Source of the DNA: Eutreptiella sp. 'Long Island Sound 2002'
Taxonomy: Eukaryota > Protista > Euglenida
NCBI GenBank assembly: GCA_964036045.1
Contig: OZ038378.1
Location: forward strand, 15,934,001-15,998,000
Length of the DNA stretch: 64,000 nt
Direction: 5' to 3'
Below, one piece after another: positions 11,496 through 41,395 of this stretch. The notes under the pieces are model-generated. The model saw only the letters and a list, made by a program, of their open reading frames with translations, was not told where the DNA came from and did no database searches. Position 1 is the stretch's first letter. Every line of letters starts with the position of its first letter. Both the position numbers and the translations under genes were made by a program.

Positions 11496-12094
11496 GAGTG
11501 AATTTCTACAAGCAGGTCCACGTTCTCAATCCTGCCAAATTTGGGTGAGATGTGCCATACGATGCAGGATTTCACAGAACTACACTTTCCCAAGGAGATG
11601 GTGCCTTTCAAAATGAGTGGCACCAGTATTGCCGGGTGGAGAACAACACCATTGACAGCGCCGTGGACGGTGTTTTTGACCAAATGGTGCTCGTTCCTGG
11701 CGAAATGGGCCACAAACACCCACAGGTTCATCAGTGATGATGACCTGACACTATTCATTCACACCTTGGAGGTTTACATTGAAAAGCACTACATACCACC
11801 GGTCACACTTTCCAGTGCCCCCCCTTGCACCTCCCCCCACGGCGGCGCAATTACGCTCCACAAACCGACACTTGCGCAAGTTGCAGAGAGCGGAGGAACT
11901 GTACACGGAGCTGTGACAAAGGCAGTGTAAGAGTGAACTTCTACAAGCAGGTCCACGTTCTCAATCCTGCCAAATTTGGGTGAGATGTGCCATACGATGC
12001 AGGATTTCACAGAACTACACTTTCCCAAGGAGATGGTGCCTTTCAAAATGAGTGGCACCAGTATTGCCGGGTGGAGAACAACACCATTGACAGC
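11225..12094 (+). repeat. Near-perfect 435-bp tandem duplication (11225-11659 and 11660-12094)
   Basis: Direct comparison. The one difference I saw is gaatttcta versus gaacttcta. The ORF track shows duplicated peptides. Confidence 0.95.
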
Positions 12095-17467: not shown

Positions 17468-17575
17468 AGCTACAAATCCCCTGTCGTTGGACCTATCTCA
17501 CCAATGTGTCATGGGACAGCTCCCTATCATGAACCCTGTCTTCGTAACCTGTCTTGAAACCTGGTTTGTGAGCAT
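17410..17575. repeat. Inverted repeat of agacagg/cctgtct units around a 45-bp spacer
   Basis: caagacaggttaccaagacagg...gatagggggctgtcc is complementary to ggacagctccctatc...cctgtcttcgtaacctgtcttg. Confidence 0.7.
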
Positions 17576-19424
17576 GGCTTTGGGTGTGGTGGATGGCTGC
17601 ATTGAGTTGCATTGTTGGTTGACAAGCAATGGCCTCTGGCAACCCGTCCCAGATTCTTGACACCCCGTGCTCTAGTGTCGCCAAGCTCCACTTGGCACCT
17701 AGTCGGACTTTGTCCAACTGATGGCGCCATGAGAGCTTGCGCATGCTGGAGAAAGCCGCTACGACAATTCTCCGGGAACCCACCCAGATCATCACCGACA
17801 CCAAGGGACACCACACCCTGCGGCTAGACGGGCAGTTTGAGGACTGCGATGAGAGTGAGGAGGAGGCTGTTTTTGTTGATGGGCCAGTTCCACTCACACA
17901 TGCTATGCTGCATATTCTGGTCTGTGAGTCTAAAGGAGTGTGTGTGGTGAAAACTATGCATGAAACCATGCGTGCTCTCTTCTTCCGAAGGATGAAAATT
18001 GTCCGCAATTGGGACAAACTCCTGAGGACATGTAGGAGGTCCACCCTACGACAATTGAGACTTCTGCAATACCTGTGCCCCCCAAAGCGAGGACGACTGA
18101 AATGTGACATGTGTTGCCACAAAGACATTCTCCAACAAGCCTTTGGCTGACAAATCCTCCTATTTGGCACAACGAAGTATGCATTTCCCACCAGTCACGC
18201 ACACCTGGGGCACGTGCCGGAAACTATGAGGTGCAGCCACATAGGATGAGGCCGACACCCCCCCCCTCCCAAAAGTGGTGTATTCCTCCACCATACCCCC
18301 TCACATCCTATGACTTTTAGGTACTAAAACATAGCAAGGGGGTGTCCCTTCTCCAACAAGAGCACATGGGTAAATACGGCATGCAGACACCTGAGGAAGC
18401 CGCGCATTCCTCAGGGCAATGATCATGCCCCATGATTCTCGTGAGCAATGGGTCACTATGCCGCGGGTTCCCCCAGTCCCTACTATTGTGCACATCCAGC
18501 AAGCGGTTGACTCACAACTGTCTTGGGCCGGGGTTTCTCAATAGGAATTGCCGAAATCCTTGCCTTTACTTATTTGTTGCTGCCGATTGGGGAGCAATTA
18601 CCCCATGGAAATATTTGGGCGGGATTTATGGACATTTACATGAAAAGATGTAAGTGGTTAAATGGTCACGCGTGAAGGAAAATAAATGCACACAGGGGTA
18701 AAGGGACCATGCAGCCGTTCCTCTGTCTCTGTCCCTTCGTGTTGACAGCATGTACACACCAACTATTCACGGCGTCTACAGACTGCACACAGGTCAACAT
18801 GCGCATGATGCCCCCAAATGCAACCAGTGTTTACAACCTGCGCACAGAGTCTACACACTGCACACAGGCACACGGACCTCTGCATCTCTATTCTAAAGGG
18901 GGCGCTTTAGCCCCCGCTAAATGGTGTCTCTTCACATCTACAACAATAGCAAAGGCTTGTGTTACGCATAAAGATGTACGTGACATCGCGACCCAATTCT
19001 TCTCTGGCCCCCATGGCTTCTGCCCTCACGCAGAACTGAGATGGGTGGGGAATGTGGGGTCCCAAAATGCACCTCAATGTCCACTCGGTCGGCACGGGCA
19101 GGTCTGTTCGCTGGAAGGCGGTAAGGCCTGGACCACAAGACCATAAAGACATTTTCTAGGATGTGAATCAAACCCTTAGAGCAACATGGAAATTGTGTAT
19201 ACAGGACTGCGTGACGGGTCGAGCCTCGGTTGTAGACCCAGCCACTTTCTGAGGGGAGGACACCTGCCGTGGGGTCTGCCCTCACCAACGGTGGTACCTG
19301 CTGCTTCCGCACACATCTCTGCAGGAGTTGCTATTTTGGGGTCACGGTTGGGGATTCGGAACGTGGATGCAGTAAGGCCCGTCGGTCGCACTCTCTCAGC
19401 CCCCTGACTCTGTCCCCTGTGGGC

Positions 19425-19802
19425 ATGCCCGGCGTGGAACAATACAAGAACTTGGTGAGTCAGGACATCGAGGAGACCGTTCGTGATAATGAGTGGCTCC
19501 GGGAGGAGATACGACAGGTCACACTGCAAAACGAAATGTTGCGGCAGCGCTTCACGGTCCTGAACAAGGCAGAGGACCGGCGCCGGACGCTGTCGCTCGG
19601 GCAGCTGCAACCCGCGCCTCCGGACGCACGGGGACTGTCAGATGCGTGGCGCCCCGACGTGCCACCGCAGAAGAGGGGCACGGGGCCGAGCAGCAGTTGG
19701 AAGGCGCTAGTGGCCGAAGAAGAGGTGCGTAGGCGGGAGTCAAGGTCTCGGGCAACGCGTTGGAATCCGAGCCTGGACCCCGAAGTACGCCACGGGCGGT
19801 GA
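19425..19802 (+). CDS. Hypothetical coiled-coil protein (125 aa), or first exon 19425-19724 of a longer gene
   Basis: Acceptor ctctctcAG at 19398-19399 precedes the ATG. GC3-rich codons. Heptad-like IEETVRDNEWLREEIRQVTLQNEMLRQRF. A phase-0 donor gag|GTGCGT follows 19724. Confidence 0.5.
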   Translation: MPGVEQYKNLVSQDIEETVRDNEWLREEIRQVTLQNEMLRQRFTVLNKAEDRRRTLSLGQLQPAPPDARGLSDAWRPDVPPQKRGTGPSSSWKALVAEEEVRRRESRSRATRWNPSLDPEVRHGR

Positions 19803-22800
19803 GGTGATGCCGCCCCAAGATCTCCCACAACGGAGCTTCTGTCGCCCGCACGCCAGACGGAGGTAGCCCTCATTTGTGGAACAAAAGACAACGGTATACC
19901 AACGCACATGCCTGTGGCCTATGCACGAGGATGTCGTTAGATATAACTCCAATTCGGGCTCCGGTTTGCCACTGCCGACAACGGAAAGACTGCAGTCGCC
20001 GGGAGGAAATTGTTGGGCTCGCAGGCCGAGTATGCGGAATGAAGCAGCGGTGGGAGAGCTGTGGTTATGGGCGTCCGAGCATCCGAGGGGGCTGTGATCG
20101 TCGTGCACGAATTGCTGCAGCGTTTGGGCCGGGCTGAACTACTGTCAGCCATCCCCCAACCGCCGTCCTCCGGCCGCCGTCGGTCCCGTCGCTTATTCCA
20201 ACGGAAGACTGCCATCGGCTTTACGCCGTAAGCCCAACATTGACATGCTTCCCGAGGGGTTGGAGGGGCGCACCTACCCCCCAGGCCCCCACCCCCATTT
20301 GCACAGTCGCCCAGGGGGCCGAGCACCGTCAGCTGCCTCAACAGTGCACGGCGCCAAAGGCGCCGAAGAAAAAGTGTCCTCTCACGGCAATGCAGTTGTA
20401 GTGGAGAGGTCAGGTTTGGGTCCGAGCGTATGCCCCGAGGGGGGGGGGGGGGGGGACTGTCTTTGGTGACGGTTCCGCCCGGGGGTGTGGGACACCGTCG
20501 CACGTTCTGGGGGTCTGTTCAAGGGGGCGGCAGGGGGCGGGATGTGAGGCCCGTGGGCTAAGTTTGGCATGCACTTCACGGACTGGTTTCGGTGCTCGGG
20601 CTCTAAGGGCTGAGGGTGAAGGCCCGCGAGCTGACACTGAAGGCCCAGACACCGCAAGTATTTTGAGCAACCCTCTTTCCGACTATGGCCCTAGTCCATC
20701 ACTGCCCCCTCGATCTGACCAGAGCTATCTCTATAGTGGCGGAGCCCCGTGTATATGATGGATCCCTTAGTTTACACCCGTGGCCCTGGTCTATGGCCAC
20801 AGCCCACTTGTATACCCCAACCATGTAGCCCAGGGATCAGTATTGAGCAGATGAGTTGGTGTGACCCCAAGCATCTGCGAGAGAAGGGGGCTATTGCGGG
20901 GCTATTGCACCGCAGCCTGCTGCACACTTCCTTCACGTTGGAATGTCGCCTCCCGTCTTTTGGGATGTGGCTGCAAGCGGGTGGCCGGCAGCACATCGTC
21001 CGGGAAAGATAGCCCCAGTGCAGGCCCATCCGGATGTGTTCACCGGCAGCTTTCTTCGCCAGTGTCGTCCAGCACCCCACGTCTGCCTGTCCACGTTCGG
21101 CTTGGATACTCCCGCCCCGTTGCATTTTCCTGTGCACCCTGTCCTTGCCACAATAACACATGAAGGCTACATGATGAAAGGCTGTGCATACCGCTGCAAT
21201 TCTTTAACAATGGAGACCGGGAAGATTCACGCAGGGGTATTTCCCACCTAACCTTCAGATATCGCTCACCACATCATTCTTGGTGACCGGTGATGTGGAG
21301 CATCCTGACACCCTTTTTGCAGGGCACATATGTTCATTGCCAAAACATCTCCTGCAGTCAGTTGGCCCCGCCTCAATGTGCACCACGCGTGCATAGTGCC
21401 AGGATTCCCTAGAGAAGCTACATACATGAGGAGACATAGTGGCGACATGGAGCATGGCAGTTGTGCGGCTTTTGCAATTTGAAGTGCACCTCAATCACAG
21501 GGCAATGCTTCGCCCTCTTTGTGATTAACAATGTTAAAGACACAGCACATATGGAAGCCTGAAAATGGGGTGCTGGTCGTGACAACAGTACCAAACTTTG
21601 AAATGCATGCACAACACACAATATGTGGGCTGGCTGCAAGGCCTTGGTTTTGGAGCACAAATATTCTGAAAGAGCTCGAAAGTATCGGAAGTTGAGGAAG
21701 CGGTTGGGTAGTGTTGAACGTGAGGGACACATTGATATTAGTGTATACCATGAGCCCCTAGTGCAGGCCGGGATGTAGTAAGGGTAGAAAGAAGCCACAC
21801 CAACACGTTGAACCACCTGCCTGCACTGCCGAGAGTGCGTCATGCTGCTTTTGATCCATGGTTGGTGACCTGCCTTTCCTGGATTGAAAAGTGGGAAATG
21901 GAATAGACAAGTAAAGCAGTGGTGGTAAAGGGCCTTGGCATCGTGGTAAGGGAGGTAAAGGAGGAAGAAGGAAGGATTTGAAAGCTGTGAGGACGCCCCC
22001 CATGGCCTCCTGGTCCCTTTGGCCAGAATCAAAGTGTCATGTAATTCCACAATTCAACAACAAATGTGGAGCATGTTACTTGAAATGCCTTATGTGATTA
22101 GGTGATTTCACCCGAAGTAGTCCTGCCTCACAGTTCCATGACCTGAAAATTGTGATTAAATGCAGATGCAAAGCACCAACCATTTTTAATCGAAGTATTT
22201 TCTATTGTATACTGATCCCATTCAAGCACCATCAAGGTACCCTGCATGCACTCTGGCAATTGTATGCCCGATTGAATCACCGAGAGGGTGGCGCCAATGT
22301 GTGTATTCTAACCCATGGTATGCACAGGGTCATGCCGATGGAACAATGCATGGATGGGTTCTATCAGAGAGTTGCACGACCATGTGCATATTTTAGCTAC
22401 ACCTAAGTTAGTTTTGTATCCGGGGGAAACGACATACCAACCGTATGGACCTTGGCCCTATGTTCCTCAGTCCATTTGGGCACAAGAGGAATCCTTTGCA
22501 AAGGAAGAAGAAAATGATGAGGGTGTTTGTTTCCAATCAGGTGTGCACACCATCTAGGTGATATATCTGAGTGTAGCTTTGCCACCAGAACATGTAGACA
22601 ATCTGTATGACATTGCAAGCTTTAGGTTGGGTGCCTAATTTGATTTGATTGTTTGTCGGTACAATGAAGTACAAGGTTGGCTATCACAGAATACTTCCCC
22701 TGTTCCCCTTGTATCTTGCCCTGTTTGGTTGGTGGTTTTGGGTGGGTTTCCGTTCTAGTGGGATTTACCACCCCACACAGTGCCAACACAGTGCACACAG

Positions 22801-26432: not shown

Positions 26433-27858
26433 CTACGCCCTGAAACAAAAGTACCACCTACCATGCCCCCCCCTCCCCTTCCCCGTTTCAAATTTTTTAC
26501 CACAACATACATACCTCAAAATTATCAGCGCGATGAGGCGGTCATTTTAAGCCATACATGTTGCGGTGTGGGAGCCCCCCCCCCCCCCCTCTGGCTGGCT
26601 CCCCCCCCAAAACCCAGCCCCCCCCCCCCCCCTCCCTGAAAGTGGCTGGAAAGTGGGAGGGAGTCGGCGTATGGCCCATTGCTACGCCCCCCCCCCCTGC
26701 ATGCAGGCCACCACTGGGACGCATTCATGTTTGGGCCTCAAACTATCTCTGCGGTGTTTTGCAGCCATTTGCATGCTGCACAATGGCCCCTGATGCCCAC
26801 TGCTGCCTCTGGCTGTGACCCAAGTGCCTCGATCGCCCGCGCAGGGCCCTGGCTCGGTCTGAATGGGGACCGAGAGGCGGCTGTTCTACCTTCAATTTGT
26901 GTTCTCTGAATTGACAGGTTTCCCTCTTGCTTCAGCCCCAGCTCTGATCTCAGACCGGTCTCAGACCGCGCCCAAGTCTCAGCCTCAGCCTCAGCCTCAG
27001 CCTTGGCCTCACTCTCAGCCCTAGCCCTTGGCCCCGGCCCCAGCCGAAGCCAATCCCAGTTGGCTTCTTCGCAGAACGCAGCCTGCCCCCTTGGGGGAAT
27101 CATGGTTTTTTGGAACCTGTCCGGGGCTTAGACAAGCAGGGGTGGGCACCGAGTCCGCAGTGCTCTGTGATATAGGCCTCTGTGCTACACCGTCTGCTGT
27201 CTGCTGCGCAGTCTGTGCTACAGGGGTCTGTGTGTGCTAGGTTCTTTCTTCCGGGTCTGTGCTACAGGGAGTAGGTGCTACTGGGGTCTGTGCTACACCA
27301 GTTTCTGATACTGGGGATCTGTGTCACACAATTTCTTCTGCGCGCGTCAGGTGCTCCAGTGTTTGTTTAATTGTTTTTTTTGGCCCAGTGCCCATGGGGC
27401 ACGTATCTGTCAACCCTTAAAAAAAAAAAAGGCCGTCCCCAGTCTGTGCCTTTCTGGTTGTTTTGTTGTGCCGACGTGATAAAATGGCTCAGTAACTTTA
27501 TGCCATGACCTCATTCTTCGGAGCCCAACACACAGCCAGTTCCTGATCTGAGGCGCCGGATCCCACAGGAACAGCACTGGCTACAACAATGGGTGGAGCC
27601 CCAGGCGCCGAAACTCTGGGAGCGGCTGGCATAGCGCGCGTCAAAGGTGATCATCGATGTCCCGTAGTACTGCACAAAACCAATCATTCGAAGGCATCAC
27701 ATATCTGGCGATTGGAAGGCCCCTGGCACAGCCAATCATTGGAGGGTACCTGCTACACAGGATGCGGGCAGCTGATACACCCGAGTGGCGCGTGGGGCCA
27801 TTCACCCGGTCCCCACTCACCCCGCGCAGCCGCTCCAAACACCCCTGCTCTCACACAG

Positions 27859-30800
27859 GGCTGGACGTGGACAAGGTGTACTACATCTCATGGAAGCAAA
27901 AGAAGGATCGAATCCTGACAAGCACCAAGAGCGCACACCAGAGCGATACACGATGTCCCTCGAGTGCAGCGGATTCCCGCAGCCCGCCATCCATCAAATG
28001 GGACATTCCATACACCCTTGAACTGAAGAAGGAGAGGGAAACAGGCCTCTGGAAGCGCACCAAACTGGTACGCCCTGCCCGATCTGGTCTACTCTGGGGT
28101 ACGCGACCGGGCTGCCCCACTCACCCCCCCCCCCCCCCCCACGCAAGACCTGATGGTGCCGCGATGTGGGGTGCGGGCCCCTCCCCACCCGCCATCATCG
28201 TGCCAGACACAAACACGATGTGCCCCAGTGACGTGTGTCCCAGCGCACCGGTTGTTACCGGAAGCCGACACACACATCCGGTACAACTACACGCACCATG
28301 TCCAACTTAGTTCACACATGTCCGACTGGCAGACAAACGGTGCGGCAGACGAACGGTGGACGGTACCTCCGCAAGGCTGATCGTGTTTCACAACCCCCGC
28401 CAGGACCTGCAGGCCCCCTGCGGAGTACCTCACTTTTGTCTCAAGTCTGGAATACAGTCAATCCATTCCACTGTGGGGTTGGGATACGCGTATGGCAGGG
28501 CTACCGTGGCGCTTTTGTGGCCGCGCGCTTTGTTTGTATGTCAGTCTGGGCAATGATCTGTGATGGTGGACATGCCGGTTACCAATGTGTCTTCCAGGGG
28601 CAACGGTGGTAAGTCGTAAGGTGTGCATGGGTGAGGGAGCTCCAATGGACACGTTGAGTAGTTGGTGGGCACTGATCTGTAGTAAGTGGGCATGGGTGCT
28701 TAGCTCATCGGCACGTCAGCTGCTTTTTTTGTCGGCCGATCCTGCGGAAAGCAGGGGCCCACTCACAGCTTCCTCGGAGGTTGCTTGCTGTGTCGCTGCT
28801 GCTTGGGTGTATGACTCGTTCCGTTTGGCGATGCTACGGGTTGGGTGTGCGTGCCGTATCGATGCGGGACGCCATCGGAAGTCGTTGCTGCATGGGCCTC
28901 TTTCGCCGGCCCGGCCAAGGGCGTCTGTCCGGGGCGTTGTGGGTTGGCAGCAGCTTCTCCCCCGTGTCCAGCCCCCCCCCCCTTGTCTAGCACCCCACCC
29001 CCCAGGGGGGGGGGGGGCGTCACTTGGCCCACGAACAATAGGAAATCAATAGGAAATCACAGGCGCCGAAGAAGAATTTTAATTGGATATACTGTCGTTG
29101 CCGTATTTAAAAACGGTCAAATTTAAAAACGGTGCCCTCGGCGTTTTTAATTATGGCGTTTTTAATTATGGCCACCCACAAGGACACTGCACGGAGCACG
29201 AAAAAGTCGCCGCAGATTCCAACTGATGACCCCAGTGCAGGTTTTAATGGCATTGGACTGTGTGATTATCGAGACAATCAGAACACAAATGCTTCCTGCA
29301 TACAACACACTGCGCTGGTGGAGAAGGCTCCGAACAGTCAGCACAGGGGACCAAATCCGCTTCCGGGGCCAAAACGAAAATCCAAAACGACATTTGCTGG
29401 AACAGCAAATGCTTCCATCAAAAAACCACCTTTGGACAGGAAAAGTGCACAAAAGCGGCTGACCGTTTTAAATTATGGCCAATTCTGGAAATCCCCCAAA
29501 ACCCCCGGCGTTTTTAATTATGGCGTTTTAAATTATGGCCGTTTTAAATTATGGCCGTTTTAGTACTAGAATTGGCAGCTCGGGAGTGGTGTACGCCCCC
29601 CCCCCCCCAGGGGGTACCCTCACCCCCCCCTTGTGCAGCCCCCCCCCCCCCCCCCCCCAGGGGGGGGACCGTCGCTCCTGGGGGGGGGGGGGGGGGGGCT
29701 GCACAAGGGGGGGGTGAGGGTACCACCGCCAGCGCCGCCAGTGTGAAGTCCAGTCGACGTGTTGGGCGCGTTTGCAACGCCTTGCCCTTTGCTTTGCGGT
29801 CCCTGTAGTATTGTGTGGTGGGTGGGCCGTGGCCCTGGGTGGTTCTTGACTGAACATGGTGGTGAGGGGGTGCCCCCCCCCCCCCCCCCTGCCATCCCCT
29901 CCGCCCCGGCCCCACCCTTCACACAGACTGCCCCTGAGAACGGACCTCGATCAGCAAAAGCAGGGCATACAAAAGACACGGCACCAGACATCGGTCGCCA
30001 AGCAGCCTTTCTGCAGCCCCCCATCCCCGCCCTGGCAAACACTGCGTCCAGGCGGAGGTGCCAACCGGCACGCTGACGGAGCCTTCACCGGGCGGGGGGG
30101 GAGGGACTAGAATTTCTGCATTTCAAATTCTGTACAAAAATTTTGTACGCAATTTGTTCGGTGTTTTTAAGGATTTGTGCAGGTAATAACAGCAAGCGCC
30201 CACTGGTTCTCATGAGCAATTATTGGGAACCACACATGATTTGTTCGCTCATTGTTCAGAAGTGGTACAGATTTTGTCGCGCCAGAATTTGTAGATTCAT
30301 ATTTTCCCCCACACGGAATACCCCCCGGTACCCAACCGGTCTGCCTGAGAGCCCCCCGGACGGGGCACAGTGCATCAGAAGTCCAAGTGGGCCGTCACTA
30401 GCCGGGCAGACTCTACCGGCCTGAAACCACCGCATGCGCGCGAGCGACTGGGCCCCGGAGCCTTACCGCGCACCTCAGCGGCACAACACTCACTGGACAC
30501 TCAAGGCGACCACACACTGAAGCAAAACCAGCCACAACGTGGCGATACTGCACCGGCTTCCGAGCGAGTTCAGCCGTCCCCCGCTGAAGCTCCGGGCGGT
30601 CCAACCGCAACATTATTGGGGGATGACCTTTGATGGGGTTGGACATGCATTGGGTCAAAACCCACGAGACTCCCCCCTCCCCATCACCCCTTTTCCTGCT
30701 GAACGCATGCCCCTTTACTTCTGCACGACTGGCGCCCGGGCCCTCTGTACAGGTCATCAGCGTCGGCGAGCAGCCCAAAGGCAAGCCCGGGGCCACCGCA

Positions 30801-33800
30801 AAGCTCAAGACGGAGGAGCTGAACCTCGAGGACCTGTACGAAGAGTGCCAACAGTCCGGCCGGACCCTGCGTCGCAACGTCTGCTTTGCAGAGGGCCGCA
30901 TCACCCTCGTCTACACCGTCGGCGTCGTGGATACCACGCAGGCCATCCCCCCGGCCCCGAACTGCACCGCCGGCACCGGCAACCGCGGCAGTTCCTCCGA
31001 AGCGAGCCTCGAAGGCGGCGATCGGCCTCCCGGCGCGCCGGGCCCCGGAGGGCCGCCGCAACTCCCTTCGCCGGCGGCCGGGGCACGGAACGGACAGGGG
31101 GGCACCGAACGGGGCTCGTTCTGGACGCCCGCACCAGCTCCAGCAGCCAATGCGCCTTCTGCGGTCGTTGTGGAGGCGTTGAAGGAGCTCTTCCCGGCGC
31201 ACCCCGTGGAATTCCTCGAGGAGGTCGCGCGCGACTTCCCGGACCGCAACACGGCCATTGAGCACGTGCTGTCGATCCCGATCCCGGACGACGCCATCAC
31301 GGCGACGCCCCCAGCGGCGAACGCTGCACGCGCGGTATCCCCCGTGCCGCCGGCCCCGCAGCCCCTGCCCCGCACCCCGGCGGTCGTCGTCCGGGAACCG
31401 CTGTCACGCACCCCCGCGCTCGTCCGCCCCGAACCCATTTCGCACACCGTGCCCCCCTCCGACCCCGCCTCCCGCACCAAGTCGCCTGTGCAGCCCGACC
31501 CACCGCAGCCTCCGGCCCGGTCCCGCAGCAAAGCGGCGGCGCCAGCGGAGGCCACATCGCGCACCCCTGCGCTCGTGCACCCGGAGCCGCTGCCCCGCAC
31601 CCCAGCGCTCGTGCGCCCCGAGCCGCTGCCCCGCTCCCACTCCGGCGACGCCGCCGCGACGATGGCGAGTATTCACGAGCTGTTCCCGGAGCTCGGGCCC
31701 GCGGAGGTGTGCAGCGCTCTGGAGAACACCAACAACGACGCGGAGCAGGCGATCAACCTCCTCCTCATGCAGGGAGCTGCGAGCGTCGCGAGCGCCCCCC
31801 TCCCGGCCTCCACCCCGGCCCCCGCCCTCCCGCGCTTCGACATGTCGCGCCTCGTCGCCCCCGCCGCCGCTCCACCGCAGCAGCGGGAGCCCCTGCTGGC
31901 GTCCTCCAAAGAAGCGCAGCGCCGGCTCCGGGAGCTGTTCCCCGACTCCTCCGAAGAGGAGATCACGACGGCGCTGAAGCAGGCGAACTGGGACCGCAAT
32001 GCGGCGGTCGGCCTCATTCTGGAGGGGGGCACCGTGCCCGGCGCGGCGCCGGGTCGGGCGACCGCGGCCTCGCGCGACGCCCCCCCGGCGGTCGCGGCGC
32101 GCGAAGTGCAGCACCTGCAGTACTGCTTCCCCAACTGCGGCACGCGGCAGATCCAGCAGGCGCTGGCCCAGGCCAAGGGGGACGCGGAGCGCGCCTCGGA
32201 GCTGCTGCTGCTCGCGGGCCAGTCCGCACCGAAGCGGACCGCCAGCCACTCGGCGCTGGCGGCGGTCCCGCGGCCCTTGGCGCGTGACGTGCCGCCGCCG
32301 ATGGAGGCGGACATCGCGGGGCTGCGGGAGATGTTCCCGGACTGCCTCGACGCGGTGCTCTGGCAAGCCCTGTGCGAGGCCAAGGGCGACCACAACGCCG
32401 CGGCCCTCGCGATCTTCAGCCTCCCCCCCGACGCCGCGCGCGCGGGCCCGCCGCCCGGCGCGTTCCGGGGCCTCATGGGCCTCGGCAACCGCCCGCAGAC
32501 GTGGCTGGACGGCGACGCCGTGCCGCATCCGGCGGCCGCGGTGGCCCCGGCCCCTGGAGCGGCGGGGGGGCTGCCCCCCGTCGGGGACATCGGGCCGCCG
32601 CTCACGCTCAGCACCGCGCGGCCGACGCGGACGCACGTCGGCCCCGGGGGGGCGCCTCTGACGGCGGAGCAAGTGGCGATGTCCGGGCACCTGCAGCAGA
32701 TCCTGCGCCCCGGCCTCACGCCCTCGGACTGCCGCTCCGCCCTCGCGTCCCCCGGAGGGTCGCACGGCCCCGAGAGCGGCCCCGTGGACAGCCCGAGGAC
32801 CGGGGAACTGGGCGGCGCGGAGGGCGAGGCCCCCGCCAGCGCGGAGCTCGAGCAGCCGCCGCGGATGGGGCCCGCGGTCGCCGTGCAGACCCTCCGGCCC
32901 GTGTCCGGCAGCGCCTCCGGGTCGAGTGCACCCCCGCTGCCCGTCACGAATGCAGCCCAACCCCCGCCTCAGACCTCCGATGCCGAGCCGCCGCCCTCCC
33001 CCCCTCCGACCCCCCCCGGCACTGGGCCCGTGCTGCCCCCGCCGCCCGGGGCTGGCGCGCCTCCGCCTCCGCCACCCCCTCCACCTCCGCCCCCCATCGC
33101 AGGGGTCCCTCCCCCACCTCCACCGCCCCCACCCCCACCGCCGCCTGGCGTCGGGCCTCCGCCCCCGCCGCCCCCGCCCCTCCCTCCCCCGGGGGTTGGG
33201 GGGATCCCGCCCCCGCCCCCGCCCCCGCCCCCTCCCCCCGGAAGAGGAGCCCCTCCCCCTCCCCCACCCCCACCCCCGCCTCCGGGGGGCCGCGGCGCCC
33301 CCCCTCCCCCACCCCCACCCCCGCCTCCGGGGGGCCGCGGCGCCCCCCCCCCTCCTCCCCCTCCCCCTCCGCCCGGCGGCAAAGGCAAGGGTGCCCCGCC
33401 CCCGCCCCCGCCTCCTCCCGGGGGCAGGGGGGGGCCTCCACCGCCCCCGCCCGGAGGCCCGGGCGGCCCCCCTCCCCCCCCCCCTCCCGCCTTCGGGGAC
33501 AAGAAGAAGGCCACGAAGAACTTGTACTGGCAGCCCATCGGGGCCGCCGCGGTGGAGCACAGCATCTGGGCGTCCATCAAGAATCAGGAGGGGGACGACA
33601 TCGCCTCGGAGGATGCGGAGGCCCTGGCGGAGATGTTCGCGAGGAAGCAGCGCGAGCAGAAGGTGTGCCGCATCCCATGTACCCACCTCCACCACGAGTC
33701 TCTCCGATGAGCAGCGATGCGGCGGCCATGCCTCACCCCTTCCTCTGGCTGCCACGTCACTCAGTATCTTGTCTCACATCGTGCCCTCTTCGCCATGTGC

Positions 33801-36800
33801 TCGGGCGGCCGCTGCTCATCGGGGCTACACCGTGGCAGCGGAGTGTCTGGGGGGGGGGGGGGGGCGTGTGGCTTGCTGCGATGGTCATTGTGTTCATTGG
33901 CCCGCCGACTTGCACGCCAGCTCGTTCATGCCGGGGTTCGCCGACTCGGGGGTTCACATCGTATCACACCGCACCGCACTGTACCGTACTGCACCACGCG
34001 ATACTACGCTTACCTCGTTCCGTCCTAAGCATCGTCTATCGTGCATATCATATCGTATTTCATCACACCGCATCGCGTGTGATCTGCCCTTTGGACGAGG
34101 TGCCTCCTTTTTCATTCCAGTGGGCAAAGTGTGCATCCCGCTCCCACTGGGCTCTGTGCCCCCATCCCGATGCAGGAACAAGAAGCCCCGGCTGCACCCA
34201 AGCCCAAGATTTTCCAGCTGGACTCCCGGCGGGAGCAGAACGTGGGAATTGTCCTGAACTACCTCAAACTGCCTGTGAAGCAGGCGTATGACGCGCTTAT
34301 TGAGATGGATGAGGACACGGTGACCCGGGACGTGCTGGAGGCCATCATCTCAATCAACCCCACGCCCGAGGAGGTGGAGCAGGTCAAGGAGGCGGAAGGT
34401 ATTGTGGCATCCGTCTCTCCGTCCCTCGCTCTTTGGTGACCTCGGCCCTTGCATTTTCCCTGCGGCAGTACGTCACCTGCTCTCCCCCCAGCGCCCGTGC
34501 CTCCCTCCCCTGCTATTTCTCTGACGAACACCCCCCCCCCAATCGTTCCCCGCCCCCACTCCTGCTCCGCCCCCCCTGCCTCCCCGAGTGCCCCGATTAC
34601 TGCACTCCTATATGCACTTGACATATCAGAACACGGACCGCCCACCACTGATGCATCCCATCTGCAGACTAACGACCGCTCCGCCCAGTCCAGGTCAATG
34701 CCGATCGACGACTGAAGGGTCTTGGTCCCGCCTTCCCCCCACACACCCTTGCCCTCTGCCCCTGGGTTTCACGTCGTTAACAGGCAGCGCAATGTCTTCC
34801 ACCGCACGTCCATGTCCACACCGAATGCAAACCACAGAGGGCCATCCACCTCCAAAACATCCATTTCTGGTTGGAGCAAGTGTGGTGCCCTCATGTGCGG
34901 CATCCCGTGCGGCACGAAGCGGCAGGCCCTCCTTGGCGCTCGGGTGTCCACCCCGCAACGGTTCTCGAAGGGGTTTTCACCGCCCATATGTGCCTGACAA
35001 TGCCCCGCGCGACGCGATGGTACCCACGCACCCCGTGTCGACCCCCCTCAGATGGAGTAGAGGGGGCGGCTTGAGTTGGCCAGGGCCCCTCCTCCACACC
35101 CTCGCGTGCCTGATCCTGCCTCGAGCCCCTGGCCCAACCGCCCCAAAAACCAACTGAGACCGCAGGCCGGAGGAGGAAGGGGGAGCAGGATGGTGACGGT
35201 ACGCTGCAGTCCGGTCGCCCAGGCACGTGCCTCGATGTACCTCCAGCCCCCCCTTGCACACCGGCCGCCCCCACCTGCATGCCTTCGGACATGCTGCTCC
35301 CCCGTACCTTGGCCCCGCAGAGCCGCTGCAGGTTCGCCGTGATGCATACGCGCGCATGACACACCAACCCACACCACTGCCCACTGCAGGGACGTTCTGG
35401 AATGGCACACCCCTCCCCCGGGCCCAATGCCTCCCCTCCGCCCCTGCCCCGGGGCCCGAGAACACATTCGTCGGGGGAAAGCCCGATTTTATGCAACAAA
35501 AACATTCCGGACCATTTTTTTGGTCCTCAGACCTTTTGCCCCCCCCCCCCCCCCTCCGCCCGTTCCCCTGCTCTGAAGCCTTGCTCCCACACTCCCTTCA
35601 CTCCCTCGCATCTCCTCGCATGCCGAGCCTGCCCTTTCCCTTTCACAGCCAGCGACCTCAAGCTCAGCGCCCCCGCAGCGTTCTTCCTGATGACCAGCCG
35701 GATCCCACGGTATCAGGCACGTCTGCAATGCTGGCTCCTGAAGCTGCGCTTCCCCGGGCTCATCGATACCGTCCAAGAGGAGCTGACGTTGTTGCGGGAC
35801 GTGTCGACGCAGCTGCGGAGCTCGCAGCCCTTCCGGAGGGTACTGCGGGCCATCTTGGACCTGGGCAACGTGCTGAATGCCGGGGCGAGGCTCGGGGGGG
35901 CCATGGGCTTCCGCATGGGGGACCTGCGGAAACTGAAGGATCTGAAGTCTGCGGATGGGCAGGTCTCGCCAGGGCATCACTGGCACGGGGTTTGGGAGGT
36001 GGAAGGGGTGCAACCCCTGGGGAGGCCCCTGTCCCTCTGGCTTGTCTGGCCCCTGTCCCTGGCCGTGCCCCTCACCTGCCCGGCTCGTGCCCTGGGCCTG
36101 TGCTCGAATGATGTTTGACCAGGGCCGGTCCAGCACAACGGATGGAGTGGGCTACTGCCCCCGACGGTCAGTGGCAGATGGCACAGCTGTTCTTCTTTGA
36201 CGGTTGAAGATCCGGTCCGATATTCCCAATCACCGCTCAGCCGCTGGGGGGGTCATATCCCCTTGCTGCCGGTGTTTCCAAGAGCTGCCTGAAGCACTTT
36301 CTGTTGCCTGCATTTCTAAGGGCACTCAAGTCAGTCGTGCGGGGTGGGTATCTTATCAAATGAGTGCAAACTTCAGTCGTCTCCTCTTTTACAGTTGCTC
36401 AGTTGCTCCTGTTTGTTCTGCTTTCTAGAAGAACGTTTTCCGCCTTCTTCACCAAGAAACAAACAGCCACACCGTGTGCCTTTCTGGAGTTTGGTGCGCA
36501 GCGAAATGCGCCCCGCAATCCACGCTCTTGTAGCGTATGGCCCCAAGACAGAGGACAAAGGGCGGCCCACAGGAAGCAGAGGAGGCGGCTGAAGAGTATG
36601 CACAGGAGCAGGCACAGGACCTCGAGAGACAGAACGTTGTGTCCAACGTGAAGAGCCCTCCCATAGTGTTGTGTGAAATGCAACCTCCCACCAGCCTCGT
36701 CCTGCCCCCGTTCTCTGGGATTGAGTATGGGGGAAATACCGCCTGGAAAAATTTAGTACGCCCAATTGTGGCACAATTTTACTTTATTAATGTTACTTAC

Positions 36801-38732
36801 TTACTTTATTTTACCCATCATTTCTAAGGATTGTGGCGCAATTTTTCCCGTATTTTTTTTGGACATCAAGTTCAAGGTTTGTACCCTCTGCAGGGGGGGG
36901 GGGGGGGGCAAAAAAATTCGGCTGGGGGTCCTTTTTCCACCCACTACCCCATTCCGCTGGCAAGTGTACAGGACCCGAGCCCAAGGGGATCTGGGCCTCC
37001 TCCCGTTGCTTGTGTCTGATGCCCATGTCTGATGGTTGGACGGACCAGGATTTGATCGGTCTACAACGGGGAGGAGTGTGCCGTTGTGGCGGGGGGCCAC
37101 AAGCCAAGGCCGTCGGCAACAAGATCGCTGCTTTCGAGTTTGAGATTATTGGGGGCTAGCCAGAGAGTACCGCTGTCGCAGCGCGATGAGTGGCGGTGCC
37201 GTGATAAAATATGTGTGTGCGCCTCCTTCACATGGGCTGTGTACCTTGTGACAAGATGAATGTAAATTAAGGGGCATCGAGGTGGCCCGGTGCGAACGCT
37301 TCTACACACTCCATGAGTACAAGCTTCGTGGTTTGAGATGACAACCTGCGCATTCTGAGGCACAGAGGATTCCGCGATGGAGTTGTGCCTGTCACCCGGG
37401 GCTTGGCTTGGTTTCGCTTTGAGGTGGAGGAGCAGTAGTGCGCGTGTGTGCGTGCGTGTCCGCGCCGGGGTACGCCCAGTCAGGGGGGGGCGGACAGCAA
37501 AAACAGTCCAACAACCCCAGCAACAACCAGCACATCCTCAATACGCCAATTATTGGGCGCCGCTGACGCGCAAATGGCACATCATGCCACATTCAGCACA
37601 GCCCCAACACACCAACTACTGGGCTCCGCGAACGCGGAAACGACACCAGCAAGAGCACCGGCCGCAGCGGCTGACAGACAGCAGCGACCCGACGCAACAT
37701 GCGAAGGGAAGAACGGGTGCCTGTCCAGGGCCCCGTAAAGGAACAACAACCAGACGGAATGTCACAACGGGGGCTGGATACCCAGGCCGTCCCAGTGGAG
37801 ACCCAAAGCCGAAGCCGAAGCAACAGCCCCTGCCCCTGCTCTGTCCCTTGCAGATCACGTTCGTGGAGTACCTTGTGGAGCACCTGCAGAAGAAGGACCC
37901 CACGCTGCTGGATTTCCCGCAGGGCCTAAGTCTCTTGGCCCGTGCCCGGGGCAGCAGCATGCAGGACGTGCACGGGTGGCTGCAGGACATCAAACGGGAG
38001 ATGAAGACCCTGGAGACGCAGCTGCGCGTGGCCTCCGCCGCCGCGAGCCCTGACCCTGACGACGCGTTTGTTGAGGTCATGCAGCCGTTCCAGGGCACGG
38101 CCGCACGACTTTCGGAACAGGCGGAAGCACGCGCCGACGAGACCAATCAGGTGCGCGATGCCGCACAGGGGCCTGCTCTGCCTGGCGCCCCTCTCCCGCC
38201 CGTACCTGAGCCCAAGGAGGAGGTCTCGACACTCTTGCGCCACCGGCGCTGTGGCCTGTCGGTGGTGCACACCTTTTTGGATCCCAGACACCGCCCCCCC
38301 CCTCTTCTACTGCCCTAAGCGACGACCCATTCCGCAGAGAGCGGAAGCCTCGCGGGAGTTGGGCCCCTCTGTCTCCGTCTCTTCTCTGCCTCTTCCTCCT
38401 CTGATTCGCCCCCCGATTCCCTCTCTTCCTCTGCCACACCCTCTCCCTCGCCCGCCGCCCGCCGCTCCACCGCCTCTGCCTCGTTGCATTTACAGTTGCT
38501 CAAGGATCTGGCGCGGTACTTTGGCGAAACCGGGGGCACACTGGACACCGCTGCGTTCTTCGGAGGTCTGTGGGATTTCTGTGAGGATTTCGAGGTGGCG
38601 AAGCGCAAGCACGCCGCGGCTGCCGCAGCCGCGGCCGCGGCCGCGCCGGCAACCGGGTCCCCGCCGTCCCCGCCAAAGCAGGAGCCCAGCGTCGAGCGGG
38701 ACAAAGGCGGTCTGCAGGAGAAGGACGGTTGA
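27859..38732 (+). CDS. Multi-exon formin (NT-C2-like, 5x CUE/UBA-like, FH1, FH2), more than 1390 aa, 5' end unresolved. Exons 27859-28067, 30753-33662, 34176-34398, 35649-35962, 37854-38150, 38496-38732
   Basis: All five introns are GT-AG and the phases (0,0,1,0,0) give one continuous frame. FH2 motifs KNLYWQPI, RREQNVGIVLNYLK, ILDLGNVLNAG, GFRMGDLRKLKDLKS, TFVEYLV, LARYFGE. Polyproline FH1 at about 32990-33490. The first exon (C2 part) is less certain than the rest. Confidence 0.9.
29092..29563. mobile_element. AT-rich MITE-like element, TA-flanked, in the formin intron
   Basis: tttaaaaacgg motifs at the left end and repeated ccg/gcgttttaaattatgg motifs at the right end, with TA on both sides. 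The extreme termini match poorly. Confidence 0.45.
29613..29725. repeat. Near-perfect fold-back (about 45-50 bp stem, short loop), miniature TA-flanked element
   Basis: ggtaccctcaccccccccttgtgcag(C)n agg ... cct(G)n ctgcacaaggggggggtgaggggtacc. Confidence 0.85.
31161..32425 (+). other. Five CUE/UBA-like ubiquitin-binding repeats within the formin
   Basis: LKELFP..AIEHVL (about 31161), IHELFP..AEQAINLLL (about 31661), LRELFP..RNAAVGLIL (about 31917), LQYCFP..AERASELLL (about 32106), LREMFP..HNAAALAIF (about 32310). Each follows the L..(M)FP...I..AL...GD...A...LL pattern. Confidence 0.8.
34957..35161 (+). repeat. 205-bp dispersed repeat, copy 1 (formin intron)
   Basis: Matches 58487-58691 with three substitutions seen. 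Confidence 0.92.
37495..37773 (+). mobile_element. SINE-like dispersed repeat, 5'-truncated copy (formin intron)
   Basis: High similarity to 40715-40996. Flanked on both sides by gggggc. Confidence 0.8.
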
Positions 38733-40612: not shown

Positions 40613-40988
40613 ATGGTGGACGGCCCGGACAGCGCGTGGAGGAACAGGGCACCTGGGCCGCACAGAAACACAGCGAGGCAGGCTATGGACGGCCTGTGGA
40701 CAGAGGCGCGTGGGCAGCAAAAACAGTCAAACGACCTCGGCAACAACCAGCACATCCTCAATACGCCAATTATTGGGCGCCGCTGACACGCAAACGGCAC
40801 ATCATGCCACATCCAGCACAGCCCCAACACACCAACTACTGGGCTCCGCGAACACGGAAACGACACCAACAAGAGCACCGGCCGCAGCGGCCGACAGAAA
40901 GCAGCGACCCGACGCAACATGTGAAGGGAAGAACGGGTGACCGTCCAGGGCCCCGTAAAGGAGCAACAACCAGACAGAATGTCACACA
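40613..40988 (+). mobile_element. SINE-like dispersed repeat, longer copy with apparent 11-bp TSD ggggggggcat
   Basis: Same core as 37495-37773. The direct repeat ggggggggcat lies at 40602-40612 and 40989-40999. Confidence 0.75.
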
Positions 40989-41395
40989 GGGGGGGGCATC
41001 CAGTGCCACGGGCGGTCGACCGACAGCTATCGTACACACGCCGGGCCTCGTCGTCTGCTACGAAGGCACGTTTTGGCGGTCGGTGGGTGCTGCTGCCGGG
41101 GGCATGTAAATGCCGGTGAGCCGTGTGCCCGTGTCTGGCGTGAGTTTGGGATGCAGTCCGCAGGGGACCGACCGGGGGTTGGCGTGTGCACGCAATGTGG
41201 ATTGGCATATCCCCGACAACCGAAACACGTGTATTGGCATGTGCCGGACGGCAGCCGGCATTGAAGGTGACGGCAGTCGGCACTCAACCGATGAGAGGGT
41301 GACCCACAGGGGGCGCATGGAATGGACGGGCACCGAAACGACAGAAGGGGCTGGCGTCTGACCCGGGGTGGCGGCGAGGACTATCGTGTCCCGAA

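What the first reader, a model, noticed from the sequence alone, without database searches (positions are those of the whole stretch)
27859..38732. Formin with an array of five CUE-like ubiquitin-binding repeats and an N-terminal C2-like domain
Seen: the spliced protein has intact FH2 signatures (lasso Trp, the Ile in NVGIVL, GNVLN, Lys in LKDLKS) and a long FH1. Five CUE-like helical repeats precede them, and a possible degenerate sixth lies near 32690. Splicing 28067 to 30753 gives SIKWDIPYTLEL...WKRTKL|VISVGEQ...LKTEELNLEDL, which resembles an NT-type (EEIG1/EHBP1) C2 domain. Known: formins usually use GBD/FH3-DAD or PTEN-C2 N-termini. I do not know of a CUE-array formin. Inference: an actin nucleator recruited to membranes by C2 and to poly-ubiquitinated cargo by avid CUE binding, coupling ubiquitin to actin in endocytosis or phagocytosis. 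No DAD-like motif is obvious at the C-terminus.
Basis: partly seen in the sequence, partly recalled or inferred. Interest (0 to 1): 0.82.

Follow-up and report, generated by a model that had tools for sequence, protein, structure and literature searches.

The report
Formin with tandem CUE ubiquitin-binding domains
This protist (reportedly euglenid) genome carries an intact gene for an actin-filament builder (a formin) whose front half holds four to five ubiquitin-binding CUE domains. I found this combination in no paper or related protein, and it would link ubiquitin tags directly to actin assembly, but there is no RNA or biochemical evidence yet.

Summary
The core observation holds. A six-exon model on the + strand (27859-38732, all GT-AG, phases consistent) encodes a complete FH2 domain. 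Pfam profile positions 7-371 of 372 are covered colinearly, and the catalytic Ile and Lys align with DAAM1 and mDia1. Before it lies an FH1 with ten poly-proline tracks. In the same 2,910-nt exon and the same frame lies an array of CUE domains.

Four repeats (R2-R5) are solid. R1 is a divergent CUE-like three-helix bundle. The proposed sixth repeat scores no better than shuffled sequence. The repeats most resemble the Tollip CUE domain.

The NT-C2 reading of the N-terminus is not demonstrated. Neither half hits any C2 profile, and the spliced peptide could not be submitted. Exon A looks coding, but it is an internal exon that lacks its 5' partner. I offer a speculative first exon at 20067-20121.

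No RNA run was available, so no junction is confirmed by transcripts. An exhaustive search of 1.84 billion proteins found only three weak CUE-repeat relatives, none a formin. No paper in the library mentions a CUE domain together with an FH2 domain.

Verdict: a real, probably functional formin with a previously undescribed ubiquitin-reader N-terminus. It is a new variant of a known kind, and its function is inferred only.

The parts
20067..20121 (+). Speculative first coding exon. It has an ATG, 18 codons plus 1 base, and a weak donor GTTTGG. It would supply the missing base and an N-terminal beta-strand (AVIVVHELL) before exon A. Low confidence, about 0.3.
   Evidence: It is the best of only three candidates within 8 kb upstream that start with ATG, end in phase 1 and score positive for coding. 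With it the model reads as 1,414 codons without a stop. No RNA or profile support.
27859..28067 (+). Exon A: an internal coding exon of 209 nt that starts in phase 1. It encodes the front part of a beta-rich, C2-like N-terminal domain.
   Evidence: The acceptor CACAG|G matches the YRCAG acceptors of the other introns, and the donor is CTG|GTACGC. The codon log-odds score is +0.16 to +0.18 per codon inside the exon. It is -0.25 in the in-frame stretch upstream and -0.49 downstream, and only 0.3% of stop-free intron segments score as high. No Pfam hit.
28068..30752 (+). Intron 1 (2,685 nt), rich in repeats.
   Evidence: GT..AG ends. DNA word depth is 100- to 1000-fold higher at 28950-30350, which indicates dispersed repeats. 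No codon periodicity upstream of 30753.
30753..33662 (+). Long exon (970 codons). It holds the C2-like tail, the CUE array with Pro/Ala-rich linkers, FH1 and the start of FH2.
   Evidence: Open frame. GC3 is 0.86-0.98 in this frame throughout, including the linkers; in FH1 the GC1/GC2 values of 0.94 fit CCN codons. DNA contigs of two runs cover 30297-33198 with no differences. The same ORF is called on an ENA contig.
30753..30926 (+). C-terminal part of the unresolved N-terminal beta-rich domain.
   Evidence: AlphaFold2 on the single sequence gives a helix at residues 25-34 and a beta-hairpin at 37-58, with pLDDT 58-72. No Pfam, PDB or Atlas hit.
31155..31274 (+). CUE R1: a divergent CUE-like three-helix bundle. 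It has the LFP motif but no di-Leu.
   Evidence: Pfam CUE 17.4 bits, matching helix 1 only. Three helices at pLDDT 87-90. Top PDB matches are CUE domains: 2ekf, SMARCAD1 CUE1 and gp78.
31355..31638 (+). Two pairs of a 36-nt (12-residue) Pro-rich repeat in the R1-R2 linker, consensus about PRTPALVRPEPL.
   Evidence: the repeat finder family D1 has four copies with spacing 36, 153 and 36. Translation.
31662..31772 (+). CUE R2 (LFP ... LLL).
   Evidence: Pfam CUE 31.7 bits. Foreign-CUE HMM 27.7 bits. AF2 pLDDT 82.7 with three helices. Best PDB match is the Tollip CUE 1wgl, TM 0.81, rmsd 0.6.
31920..32027 (+). CUE R3 (LFP ... LIL).
   Evidence: Pfam CUE 25.6 bits. HMM 26.8 bits.
32106..32216 (+). 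CUE R4 (CFP ... LLLL).
   Evidence: Pfam CUE 19.4 bits, just under the cut-off. HMM 26.4 bits.
32310..32420 (+). CUE R5 (MFP ... AIF).
   Evidence: No Pfam hit when scanned alone. HMM 16.8 bits against a shuffle maximum of 1.6. It aligns to the CUE consensus.
32688..32744 (+).
   Evidence: HMM 1.6 bits, equal to the best of 200 shuffles. No Pfam hit. It lacks the FP motif and the third helix in the alignment.
32985..33488 (+). FH1: a proline-rich region with ten poly-Pro tracks of 6-13 residues.
   Evidence: Short-read contigs break at 33199-33422 because of the repeat.
33501..33662 (+). Start of FH2 (lasso region with both Trp residues).
   Evidence: Pfam FH2 profile 7-58, 13.9 bits on its own. 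Donor AAG|GTGTGC.
34176..34398 (+). FH2 exon 3. It contains the conserved Ile (NVGIVL).
   Evidence: Pfam FH2 48.3 bits, profile 64-139. Alignment to DAAM1 and mDia1. Splice sites.
35649..35962 (+). FH2 exon 4. It contains GNVLNAG and the conserved Lys (DLKSAD).
   Evidence: Pfam FH2 88.1 bits, profile 140-244. mDia1 E = 2e-13 with the motifs aligned.
37854..38150 (+). FH2 exon 5.
   Evidence: Pfam FH2 38.0 bits, profile 243-338. Splice sites.
38496..38732 (+). FH2 exon 6 and the C-terminal tail (poly-Ala, then a Pro/Ser-rich stretch, then the stop). No DAD-like motif.
   Evidence: Pfam FH2 profile 339-371, weak on its own. Translation.

Best explanation
This is a real multi-exon gene for a formin of at least 1,396 residues.

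Shown:
- The C-terminal half is a standard FH1-FH2 actin-assembly machine. It has ten profilin-type poly-proline tracks and a complete FH2 with the lasso Trp residues, the barbed-end Ile and the Lys.
- The N-terminal half lacks the GBD/FH3 module of Diaphanous-type formins, and the C-terminus lacks their DAD motif.
- In its place are four solid CUE domains of the Tollip type and one divergent one. Long disordered Pro/Ala-rich linkers separate them.
- An unresolved beta-rich, possibly C2-like, domain precedes the array. It is split over exon A and the start of the long exon.
- The CUE hallmark FP motif is kept in all five repeats. The helix-3 di-Leu is kept in R2 and R4, and as LIL in R3.

Inferred:
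- Each CUE binds ubiquitin weakly.
- FH2 dimerises, so a dimer would present 8-10 CUE domains on flexible tethers. That would give avid binding to poly-ubiquitin chains or to surfaces dense in ubiquitinated cargo.
- This binding would concentrate, and perhaps release, the FH1-FH2 module there. Unbranched actin filaments would then be built at ubiquitin-marked membranes such as endocytic, phagocytic or autophagic sites.

I put the domain architecture at about 0.85 and the ubiquitin-recruitment mechanism at about 0.5.
For: - FH2. The Pfam pieces are colinear over profile 7-371. The key residues align with solved mDia1 and DAAM1 structures.
- FH1. Ten poly-Pro tracks.
- CUE. Pfam 68.5 bits for the exon; R2 and R3 pass the cut-off singly. 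The foreign-CUE HMM scores R2-R5 at 17-28 bits against shuffles of at most 1.6.
- Repeat profile against the PDB. The best match is the Tollip CUE, E = 3.8e-9, with MFP and LL aligned.
- Structure. AF2 gives three-helix bundles for R2 and R1, and their top structural matches are CUE/UBA domains.
- One protein. The same exon and frame carry CUE, FH1 and the FH2 start. Codon periodicity runs continuously through the linkers and stops at both exon ends.
- Splicing. All five modelled introns downstream of exon A are GT-AG with YRCAG acceptors and consistent phases, and the spliced frame is open.
- No Drf_GBD or Drf_FH3 Pfam hit.
Against: - No transcript evidence. The three runs that hold the locus are DNA, and the RNA-labelled runs of the species hold none of it.
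- No orthologue with this architecture was found, so conservation cannot support function.
- R5 and R1 lack the di-Leu and fail or barely reach Pfam scores singly.
- Some CUE domains bind partners other than ubiquitin. SMARCAD1 CUE1, which binds KAP1, is among the structural matches.
- The 5' end of the gene is unknown.
- Short-read contigs do not bridge 33199-33422 inside FH1, so continuity there rests on the long-read assembly.
Confidence: 0.6

Rival explanations
1. The architecture is the same, but the CUE array does not read ubiquitin on cargo. It acts instead as a regulatory or scaffolding module. It could bind a ubiquitin-like domain or another partner. It could dimerise. Or it could mediate coupled mono-ubiquitination of the formin itself followed by intramolecular binding, which would replace the missing DID-DAD autoinhibition.
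For: - No GBD/FH3 or DAD is present, so some other regulation is needed.
- The structural neighbours include SMARCAD1 CUE1, which binds KAP1 rather than ubiquitin.
- R1 and R5 lack the di-Leu.
- From general knowledge, not tested here: CUE and other ubiquitin-binding domains can promote mono-ubiquitination of their own protein and so inhibit it, and Tollip and Vps9 CUE domains dimerise.
Against: - The FP motif is kept in all five repeats and the di-Leu in R2-R4, and these are the ubiquitin-contact motifs.
- The closest solved relative by sequence profile is the ubiquitin-binding Tollip CUE.
Confidence: 0.2
2. The gene model is wrong in the part that matters. The CUE-coding stretch and the FH1-FH2 stretch would then not be translated as one protein. 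Possible causes are internal trans-splicing, an unrecognised intron, a collapse or indel in the assembly of the poly-C FH1 region, or a silent pseudogene.
For: - No RNA evidence.
- At 74-87% GC, long ORFs also occur in other frames and on the opposite strand, so ORF length alone proves little.
- Short-read contigs break inside FH1.
- The precomputed Pfam record for the called 1,025-residue ORF is empty, and the protein is not in the 15-billion-protein collection.
Against: - GC3 periodicity stays in one frame from 30753 to 33662, through the linkers and on both sides of FH1.
- There is no in-frame stop that could end a separate CUE protein.
- CUE and FH2 Pfam matches lie in the same frame.
- The ENA contig carries the identical ORF.
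- About 1,396 codons across six exons are intact, with the catalytic residues conserved.
Confidence: 0.1
3. The repeats are generic UBA-like three-helix spacers with no specific ligand, and the protein behaves as a plain FH1-FH2 formin like those of kinetoplastids.
For: - Three-helix bundles are common, and the Foldseek E-values for such short domains are not significant.
- Kinetoplastid formins were reported to have only FH1-FH2 (PMC2386819).
Against: - The sequence-level CUE signal is strong: 68.5 bits in Pfam, and E = 3.8e-9 against the Tollip CUE with the motif residues aligned.
- Four to five copies are kept in frame with their hallmark motifs.
Confidence: 0.1

Closest known systems
Diaphanous-related formins (mDia1, DAAM1)
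   Same: - FH1 with multiple poly-Pro tracks, followed by a complete FH2.
- The best solved-structure relatives of the FH2 exons are mDia1 (E = 2e-13) and DAAM1, with the Ile, Lys and GNxxNAG motifs aligned.
   Different: - No GBD/FH3 (DID) profile hit and no DAD motif.
- The N-terminus is a CUE array instead, so Rho-GTPase release of DID-DAD autoinhibition is not expected.
Tollip / Cue5 (CUET) ubiquitin adaptors
   Same: - The CUE repeats match the Tollip CUE best, by sequence profile (E = 3.8e-9) and by structure (1wgl, TM 0.81; the Atlas Tollip cluster).
- Tollip also pairs a lipid-binding C2 domain with a CUE domain.
   Different: - Tollip has one CUE at its C-terminus and no actin-assembly module. 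This protein has 4-5 CUE domains before FH1-FH2.
- A C2 domain here is not demonstrated.
Kinetoplastid formins (the same phylum, if the euglenid assignment holds)
   Same: FH1-FH2 core without GBD/FH3 (PMC2386819).
   Different: They were reported as bare FH1-FH2. No kinetoplastid protein appeared among the relatives of the CUE region in the exhaustive search.
Plant class II formins (PTEN-C2 N-terminus)
   Same: A non-GBD targeting module placed N-terminal to FH1-FH2. This precedent shows that formins swap their N-terminal localisation domains (PMC2386819).
   Different: That module is a PTEN-like phosphatase plus C2 domain that binds lipid, not a ubiquitin reader.
CUE-repeat proteins of other protists: P0003 (euglenid Chasmostoma nieuportense, EukProt) and P0001 (Chromera velia C2-CUE-CUE-metacaspase)
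   Same: - These were the only significant relatives of the CUE region (E = 9e-5 to 4e-4, 35-36% identity).
- Both have tandem CUE domains with FP and LL motifs. P0001 also has a C2 domain in front of its CUE domains.
   Different: Neither has FH1 or FH2. Their C-terminal parts are a metacaspase in P0001 and a Cys-rich region in P0003.

Membership tests
Formin (FH2 domain, PF02181) | FH2 profile match above the Pfam gathering score, covering the whole domain | tested here: met
   The pieces score 48.3, 88.1 and 38.0 bits against a cut-off of 34.8. Two weaker end pieces complete a colinear match over profile 7-371 of 372.
Formin (FH2 domain, PF02181) | Conserved barbed-end residues: the Ile of the knob, the Lys of the post, and the GNxxN motif | tested here: met
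   GIVL aligns with DAAM1 NILL. GNVLNAG and DLKSAD align with mDia1 GNYMNAG and DTKSAD.
Formin (FH2 domain, PF02181) | Proline-rich FH1 directly N-terminal to FH2 | tested here: met
   Ten poly-Pro runs of 6-13 residues end 5 residues before the FH2 match.
Formin (FH2 domain, PF02181) | Actin nucleation and processive elongation activity | not testable with these tools
   Needs pyrene-actin or TIRF assays.
CUE domain (PF02845) | Profile match above the gathering score | tested here: met
   The whole exon scores 68.5 bits with 4 stretches. Singly, R2 scores 31.7 and R3 25.6 bits, above 21.1. R4 scores 19.4 and R1 17.4 bits, below it, and R5 has no hit. R5 is recovered at 16.8 bits by a foreign-CUE HMM.
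CUE domain (PF02845) | Three-helix bundle fold | tested here: met
   R2 has pLDDT 82.7 and three helices. R1 has three helices at pLDDT 87-90. The best PDB matches are CUE or UBA domains. R3-R5 were not folded.
CUE domain (PF02845) | Ubiquitin-contact motifs: Met/Leu-Phe-Pro after helix 1 and di-Leu at the end of helix 3 | tested here: met
   The FP motif is present in all five repeats (LFP, LFP, LFP, CFP, MFP). The di-Leu is present in R2 and R4 and as LIL in R3. It is absent in R1 (VLS) and R5 (AIF).
CUE domain (PF02845) | Binds ubiquitin | not testable with these tools
   Needs pull-down, ITC or NMR.
NT-C2 (EEIG1/EHBP1 N-terminal C2, PF10358) | Profile match to PF10358 | tested here: inconclusive
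   Neither half, scanned alone, hits PF10358 or the classical C2 profile PF00168 at E <= 10. The spliced peptide has no reference, so it was not submitted.
NT-C2 (EEIG1/EHBP1 N-terminal C2, PF10358) | Beta-sandwich fold | tested here: inconclusive
   Only a modest-confidence beta-hairpin is predicted in the part encoded by the long exon. No PDB or Atlas hits for either half. No similarity to the Chromera C2 domain: 45% of shuffles score as well.
NT-C2 (EEIG1/EHBP1 N-terminal C2, PF10358) | Position at the extreme N-terminus of the protein | tested here: inconclusive
   Exon A is internal and starts in phase 1 with no in-frame ATG. The candidate first exon at 20067-20121 would put the domain at the N-terminus, but it is speculative.
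Diaphanous-related formin | N-terminal GBD/FH3 (DID) and C-terminal DAD | tested here: not met
   No Drf_GBD or Drf_FH3 Pfam hits in exon A or the long exon. The tail after FH2 is poly-Ala and Pro/Ser-rich, with no MDxLL-type motif.
Tollip/CUET adaptor | C2 domain plus a single C-terminal CUE domain (with a Tom1-binding or Atg8-interacting motif) | tested here: not met
   The CUE type matches. But there is no C2 profile hit, the CUE domains are multiple and internal, and the C-terminus is FH1-FH2. Tom1-binding and Atg8-interacting motifs were not examined.

The most novel reading that the evidence does not exclude
This would be a direct, adaptor-free link from ubiquitin to actin polymerisation. 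A dimeric formin, with its 8-10 tethered CUE domains, would be recruited to and switched on at membranes carrying poly-ubiquitin or dense mono-ubiquitin. In a euglenid these would be the reservoir/flagellar-pocket endocytic zone, phagosomes or autophagic cargo. Ubiquitination itself would then nucleate unbranched actin filaments, with an N-terminal C2-type domain adding coincidence detection of lipid.
Probability: 0.3. Interest if true: 0.75.

Novelty: new variant of a known kind. Interest (0 to 1): 0.55.

Why it matters
Formins are targeted and regulated through their N-termini. The known solutions are Rho-GTPase-binding GBD/FH3, PTEN-C2, transmembrane segments, PH and PDZ domains, among others.

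A ubiquitin-reader array would be a new input. It would make ubiquitination a direct spatial cue for the assembly of unbranched actin. In yeast and animals that coupling is thought to need separate endocytic adaptors.

The locus also gives a concrete, testable candidate for how euglenozoans organise actin. Their formins lack the canonical regulatory domains, and their endocytosis depends on both ubiquitin and actin.

The claim is limited. It rests on one genomic locus in one organism, with no transcript, orthologue or biochemical support.

Tried and rejected
- **RNA confirmation.** Laying them showed even depth over introns and exons. The 'joints' were poly-C repeat artefacts and no splice joints appeared.
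- **Word-index protein searches.** The search with the CUE region was swamped by low-complexity candidates and returned nothing. The search with the FH2 start (residues 913-970) also returned nothing.
- **Atlas feature searches.** The long exon and both halves of the N-terminal domain gave no usable hit.
- **C2 / NT-C2 tests.** I tried Pfam on each half, PDB sequence search on each half, and Smith-Waterman against the Chromera C2 domain with shuffles. All were negative.
  - The spliced 130-150-residue peptide has no reference and was not typed in. So hmmscan and AlphaFold2 of the joined domain were left out.
- **In-frame ATG at 27657 as the start codon.** Rejected: the coding score of 27657-27860 is -0.25 per codon, the same as intron.
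- **ATG at 30633 as the start codon.** Rejected: there is no codon periodicity upstream of 30753.
- **Upstream coding-like pieces** at 14.8-19.8 kb and 25.3 kb. They have no Pfam identity and no link to the formin could be shown.
- **Spliced-leader sequences.** Rfam found nothing.
- **Related genome for synteny.** The closest cyclase relative lies in the same assembly, so it is a paralogue.
- **Cluster look-ups.** The FH2 ORF pieces are singletons.

Full report
**What is there**

The region is GC-rich eukaryotic DNA, 58-87% GC. On the + strand one long open frame (30630-33710) is followed by four shorter open pieces.

Pfam finds FH2 (PF02181) on five colinear pieces:

| Piece | FH2 profile positions | Bits |
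|---|---|---|
| End of the long ORF | 7-58 | 13.9 |
| 34131-34439 | 64-139 | 48.3 |
| 35402-36118 | 140-244 | 88.1 |
| 37377-38318 | 243-338 | 38.0 |
| 38484-38732 | 339-371 | 11.2 |

The same scan finds CUE (PF02845) on the long ORF at 68.5 bits, in 4 stretches.

**Gene model**

Reading the DNA at the borders gives canonical GT-AG introns whose phases fit:

| Exon | Coordinates |
|---|---|
| Exon A | 27859-28067 |
| Long exon | 30753-33662 |
| Exon 3 | 34176-34398 |
| Exon 4 | 35649-35962 |
| Exon 5 | 37854-38150 |
| Exon 6 | 38496-38732 (stop) |

- All acceptors read YRCAG.
- The spliced frame is open for about 1,396 codons from exon A onward.
- No FH2 profile positions are missing between pieces, so no FH2 exon is missing.
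- Introns 1, 3 and 4 carry dispersed repeats. Intron 1 shows DNA depth spikes. The segment 34957-35161 is 99% identical to 58487-58691, and 37481-37773 is 92% identical to 40701-40993.

**The formin half**

- The exon-4 peptide aligns to mDia1 FH2 (E = 2e-13). GNVLNAG aligns with GNYMNAG, and DLKSAD with DTKSAD.
- The exon-3 peptide aligns to DAAM1 and mDia1. The Ile of GIVL lies on the Ile of NILL.
- The two lasso Trp residues are visible (LYW, SIW). That 59-residue piece alone finds nothing in the PDB.
- FH1 has ten poly-Pro runs of 6-13 residues.
- The tail after FH2 is poly-Ala followed by a Pro/Ser-rich stretch, with no DAD-like motif.
- No GBD or FH3 profile hits anywhere.

**The CUE array**

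| Repeat | Pfam CUE alone (cut-off 21.1) | Foreign-CUE HMM |
|---|---|---|
| R1 | 17.4 bits, helix 1 only | -0.7 bits |
| R2 | 31.7 bits | 27.7 bits |
| R3 | 25.6 bits | 26.8 bits |
| R4 | 19.4 bits | 26.4 bits |
| R5 | none | 16.8 bits |
| R6 | none | 1.6 bits |

- The foreign-CUE HMM was built only from the CUE repeats of three unrelated proteins. The best score over 200 shuffles was 1.6 bits.
- R1 folds without any alignment into three helices at pLDDT 87-90. Its best PDB matches are CUE domains: 2ekf, SMARCAD1 CUE1 (rmsd 1.0-1.4) and gp78.
- R2, folded with the small repeat alignment, has pLDDT 82.7. It matches the Tollip CUE 1wgl best, at TM 0.81 and rmsd 0.6. It also matches the Atlas Tollip cluster.
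- A profile of the repeats hits the Tollip CUE at E = 3.8e-9, with MFP and LL aligned.
- The FP motif is present in all five repeats. The di-Leu is present in R2 and R4, appears as LIL in R3, and is absent in R1 and R5.

So there are four solid CUE domains, one divergent one, and no sixth.

**Is it one protein?**

In DNA this GC-rich, long ORFs also appear in other frames and on the opposite strand, so ORF length alone is weak evidence. Three other observations are better:

- GC at codon position 3 is 0.86-0.98 in the proposed frame in every 150-nt window from 30753 to about 33000. In FH1 it switches to the pattern expected for CCN codons, then returns to 0.92. It is absent just upstream of 30753 and downstream of 33662.
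- The CUE and FH2 Pfam matches share that frame.
- DNA contigs of two runs cover 30297-33198 without a difference. They break only inside the FH1 repeat at 33199-33422. An ENA contig carries the identical ORF.

I put the single-protein architecture at about 0.85.

**The N-terminus**

- Exon A has a positive codon log-odds score of +0.16 to +0.18 per codon. Only 0.3% of stop-free intron segments reach that. The in-frame stretch upstream, which includes the ATG at 27657, scores -0.25, and the stretch after the donor scores -0.49.
- Exon A is therefore probably a real internal exon. It begins in phase 1 and has no in-frame ATG, so at least one upstream exon is missing.
- A scan for ATG-initiated, phase-1, positively scoring candidates within 8 kb upstream gave three. 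The best is 20067-20121. It has a weak donor and would add a hydrophobic beta-strand-like start. This is a lead only.
- The C2 or NT-C2 reading has no support from any tool: Pfam on either half, PDB sequences, Atlas features, or comparison with a genuine C2 domain.
- AlphaFold2 shows only a modest beta-hairpin in the part encoded by the long exon.
- The joined peptide has no reference, so I did not submit it. That test remains open.

**Relatives and novelty**

- The exhaustive search of 1.84 billion representatives with the first 700 residues of the long exon gave three hits, all weak (E = 9e-5 to 4e-4).
  - P0001 is a Chromera velia C2-CUE-CUE-metacaspase.
  - P0002 is an unnamed metagenomic CUE/UBA-repeat protein.
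  - P0003 is a CUE-repeat protein of the euglenid Chasmostoma nieuportense.
  - None has FH2.
- That search would miss a formin that carries a single, dissimilar CUE domain. It therefore shows there are no close orthologues, not that the architecture is absent everywhere.
- The long ORF itself is not in the protein collection. This explains why no self-hit appeared.
- No paper in the library holds both 'FH2 domain' and 'CUE domain', or both 'NT-C2' and 'FH2'. Other formin/CUE searches returned only the everyday word 'cue'.
- A survey of 295 formins lists no ubiquitin-related domain, and reports kinetoplastid formins as FH1-FH2 only (PMC2386819).
The Chasmostoma hit is consistent with that. The window's cyclase finds paralogues in the same ENA assembly, and a Euglena gracilis transcript at only 38% identity. 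I did not verify the species.

**Mechanism**

- Shown: domain identities, motif conservation, and the intact catalytic residues.
- Inferred: each CUE binds ubiquitin weakly. FH2 dimerisation would give 8-10 tethered CUE domains and so avid binding to chains or to densely ubiquitinated surfaces, which would localise or activate filament assembly there.
- Rivals: the array may be an autoregulatory or partner-binding module (0.2). The gene model may be an artefact or the locus silent (0.1). The repeats may be inert helical spacers (0.1).

**Verdict**

The core of the finding is real and appears undescribed. The NT-C2 claim and the sixth repeat are not supported. The function is untested. This is a new variant of a known kind, of moderate interest.

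Noticed in passing
window 31355-31638: Four copies, in two pairs, of a 12-residue Pro-rich unit (about PRTPALVRPEPL) lie in the linker between CUE R1 and R2. It may be a short linear motif, such as a Thr-Pro phosphosite or an SH3/WW ligand.
   Followed up: partly
window 34957-35161 and 58487-58691; 37481-37773 and 40701-40993: Dispersed repeats sit inside formin introns 3 and 4, with copies elsewhere in the window at 99% and 92% identity. Intron 1 (28950-30350) shows 100- to 1000-fold excess DNA word depth. The introns are loaded with transposon-like repeats.
   Followed up: partly
window 14846-19727, + strand: Several pieces score as coding and have high GC3, including a coiled-coil-like stretch at 19395-19727. 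None has a Pfam identity. They may be an unannotated upstream gene or, less likely, far-upstream formin exons.
   Followed up: partly
window 3458-5158, + strand: The intronless class III cyclase ORF (Pfam Guanylate_cyc) has several paralogues in the same ENA assembly, at 74% and 57% identity. It is only 38% identical to the nearest Euglena gracilis transcript protein.
   Followed up: partly
window 11350-11930: A tandem duplication of about 435 nt gives two near-identical ORF pieces on both strands. The same peptides appear at 11404-11478 and 11839-11913.
   Followed up: no
window 28100-28145, 29870-29890, 33199-33490 and many other places: Long homopolymer C or G runs are frequent in introns and intergenic DNA. 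They cause short-read contigs to break and produce false 'joints' between distant poly-C tracts.
   Followed up: partly
window 30633-33707 (ENA ERZ25074135 ctg10866): The 1,025-residue ORF is called as a gene on the public contig. Yet it has no precomputed Pfam hit on record and is not in the 15-billion-protein collection, so database searches cannot find this protein by itself.
   Followed up: yes
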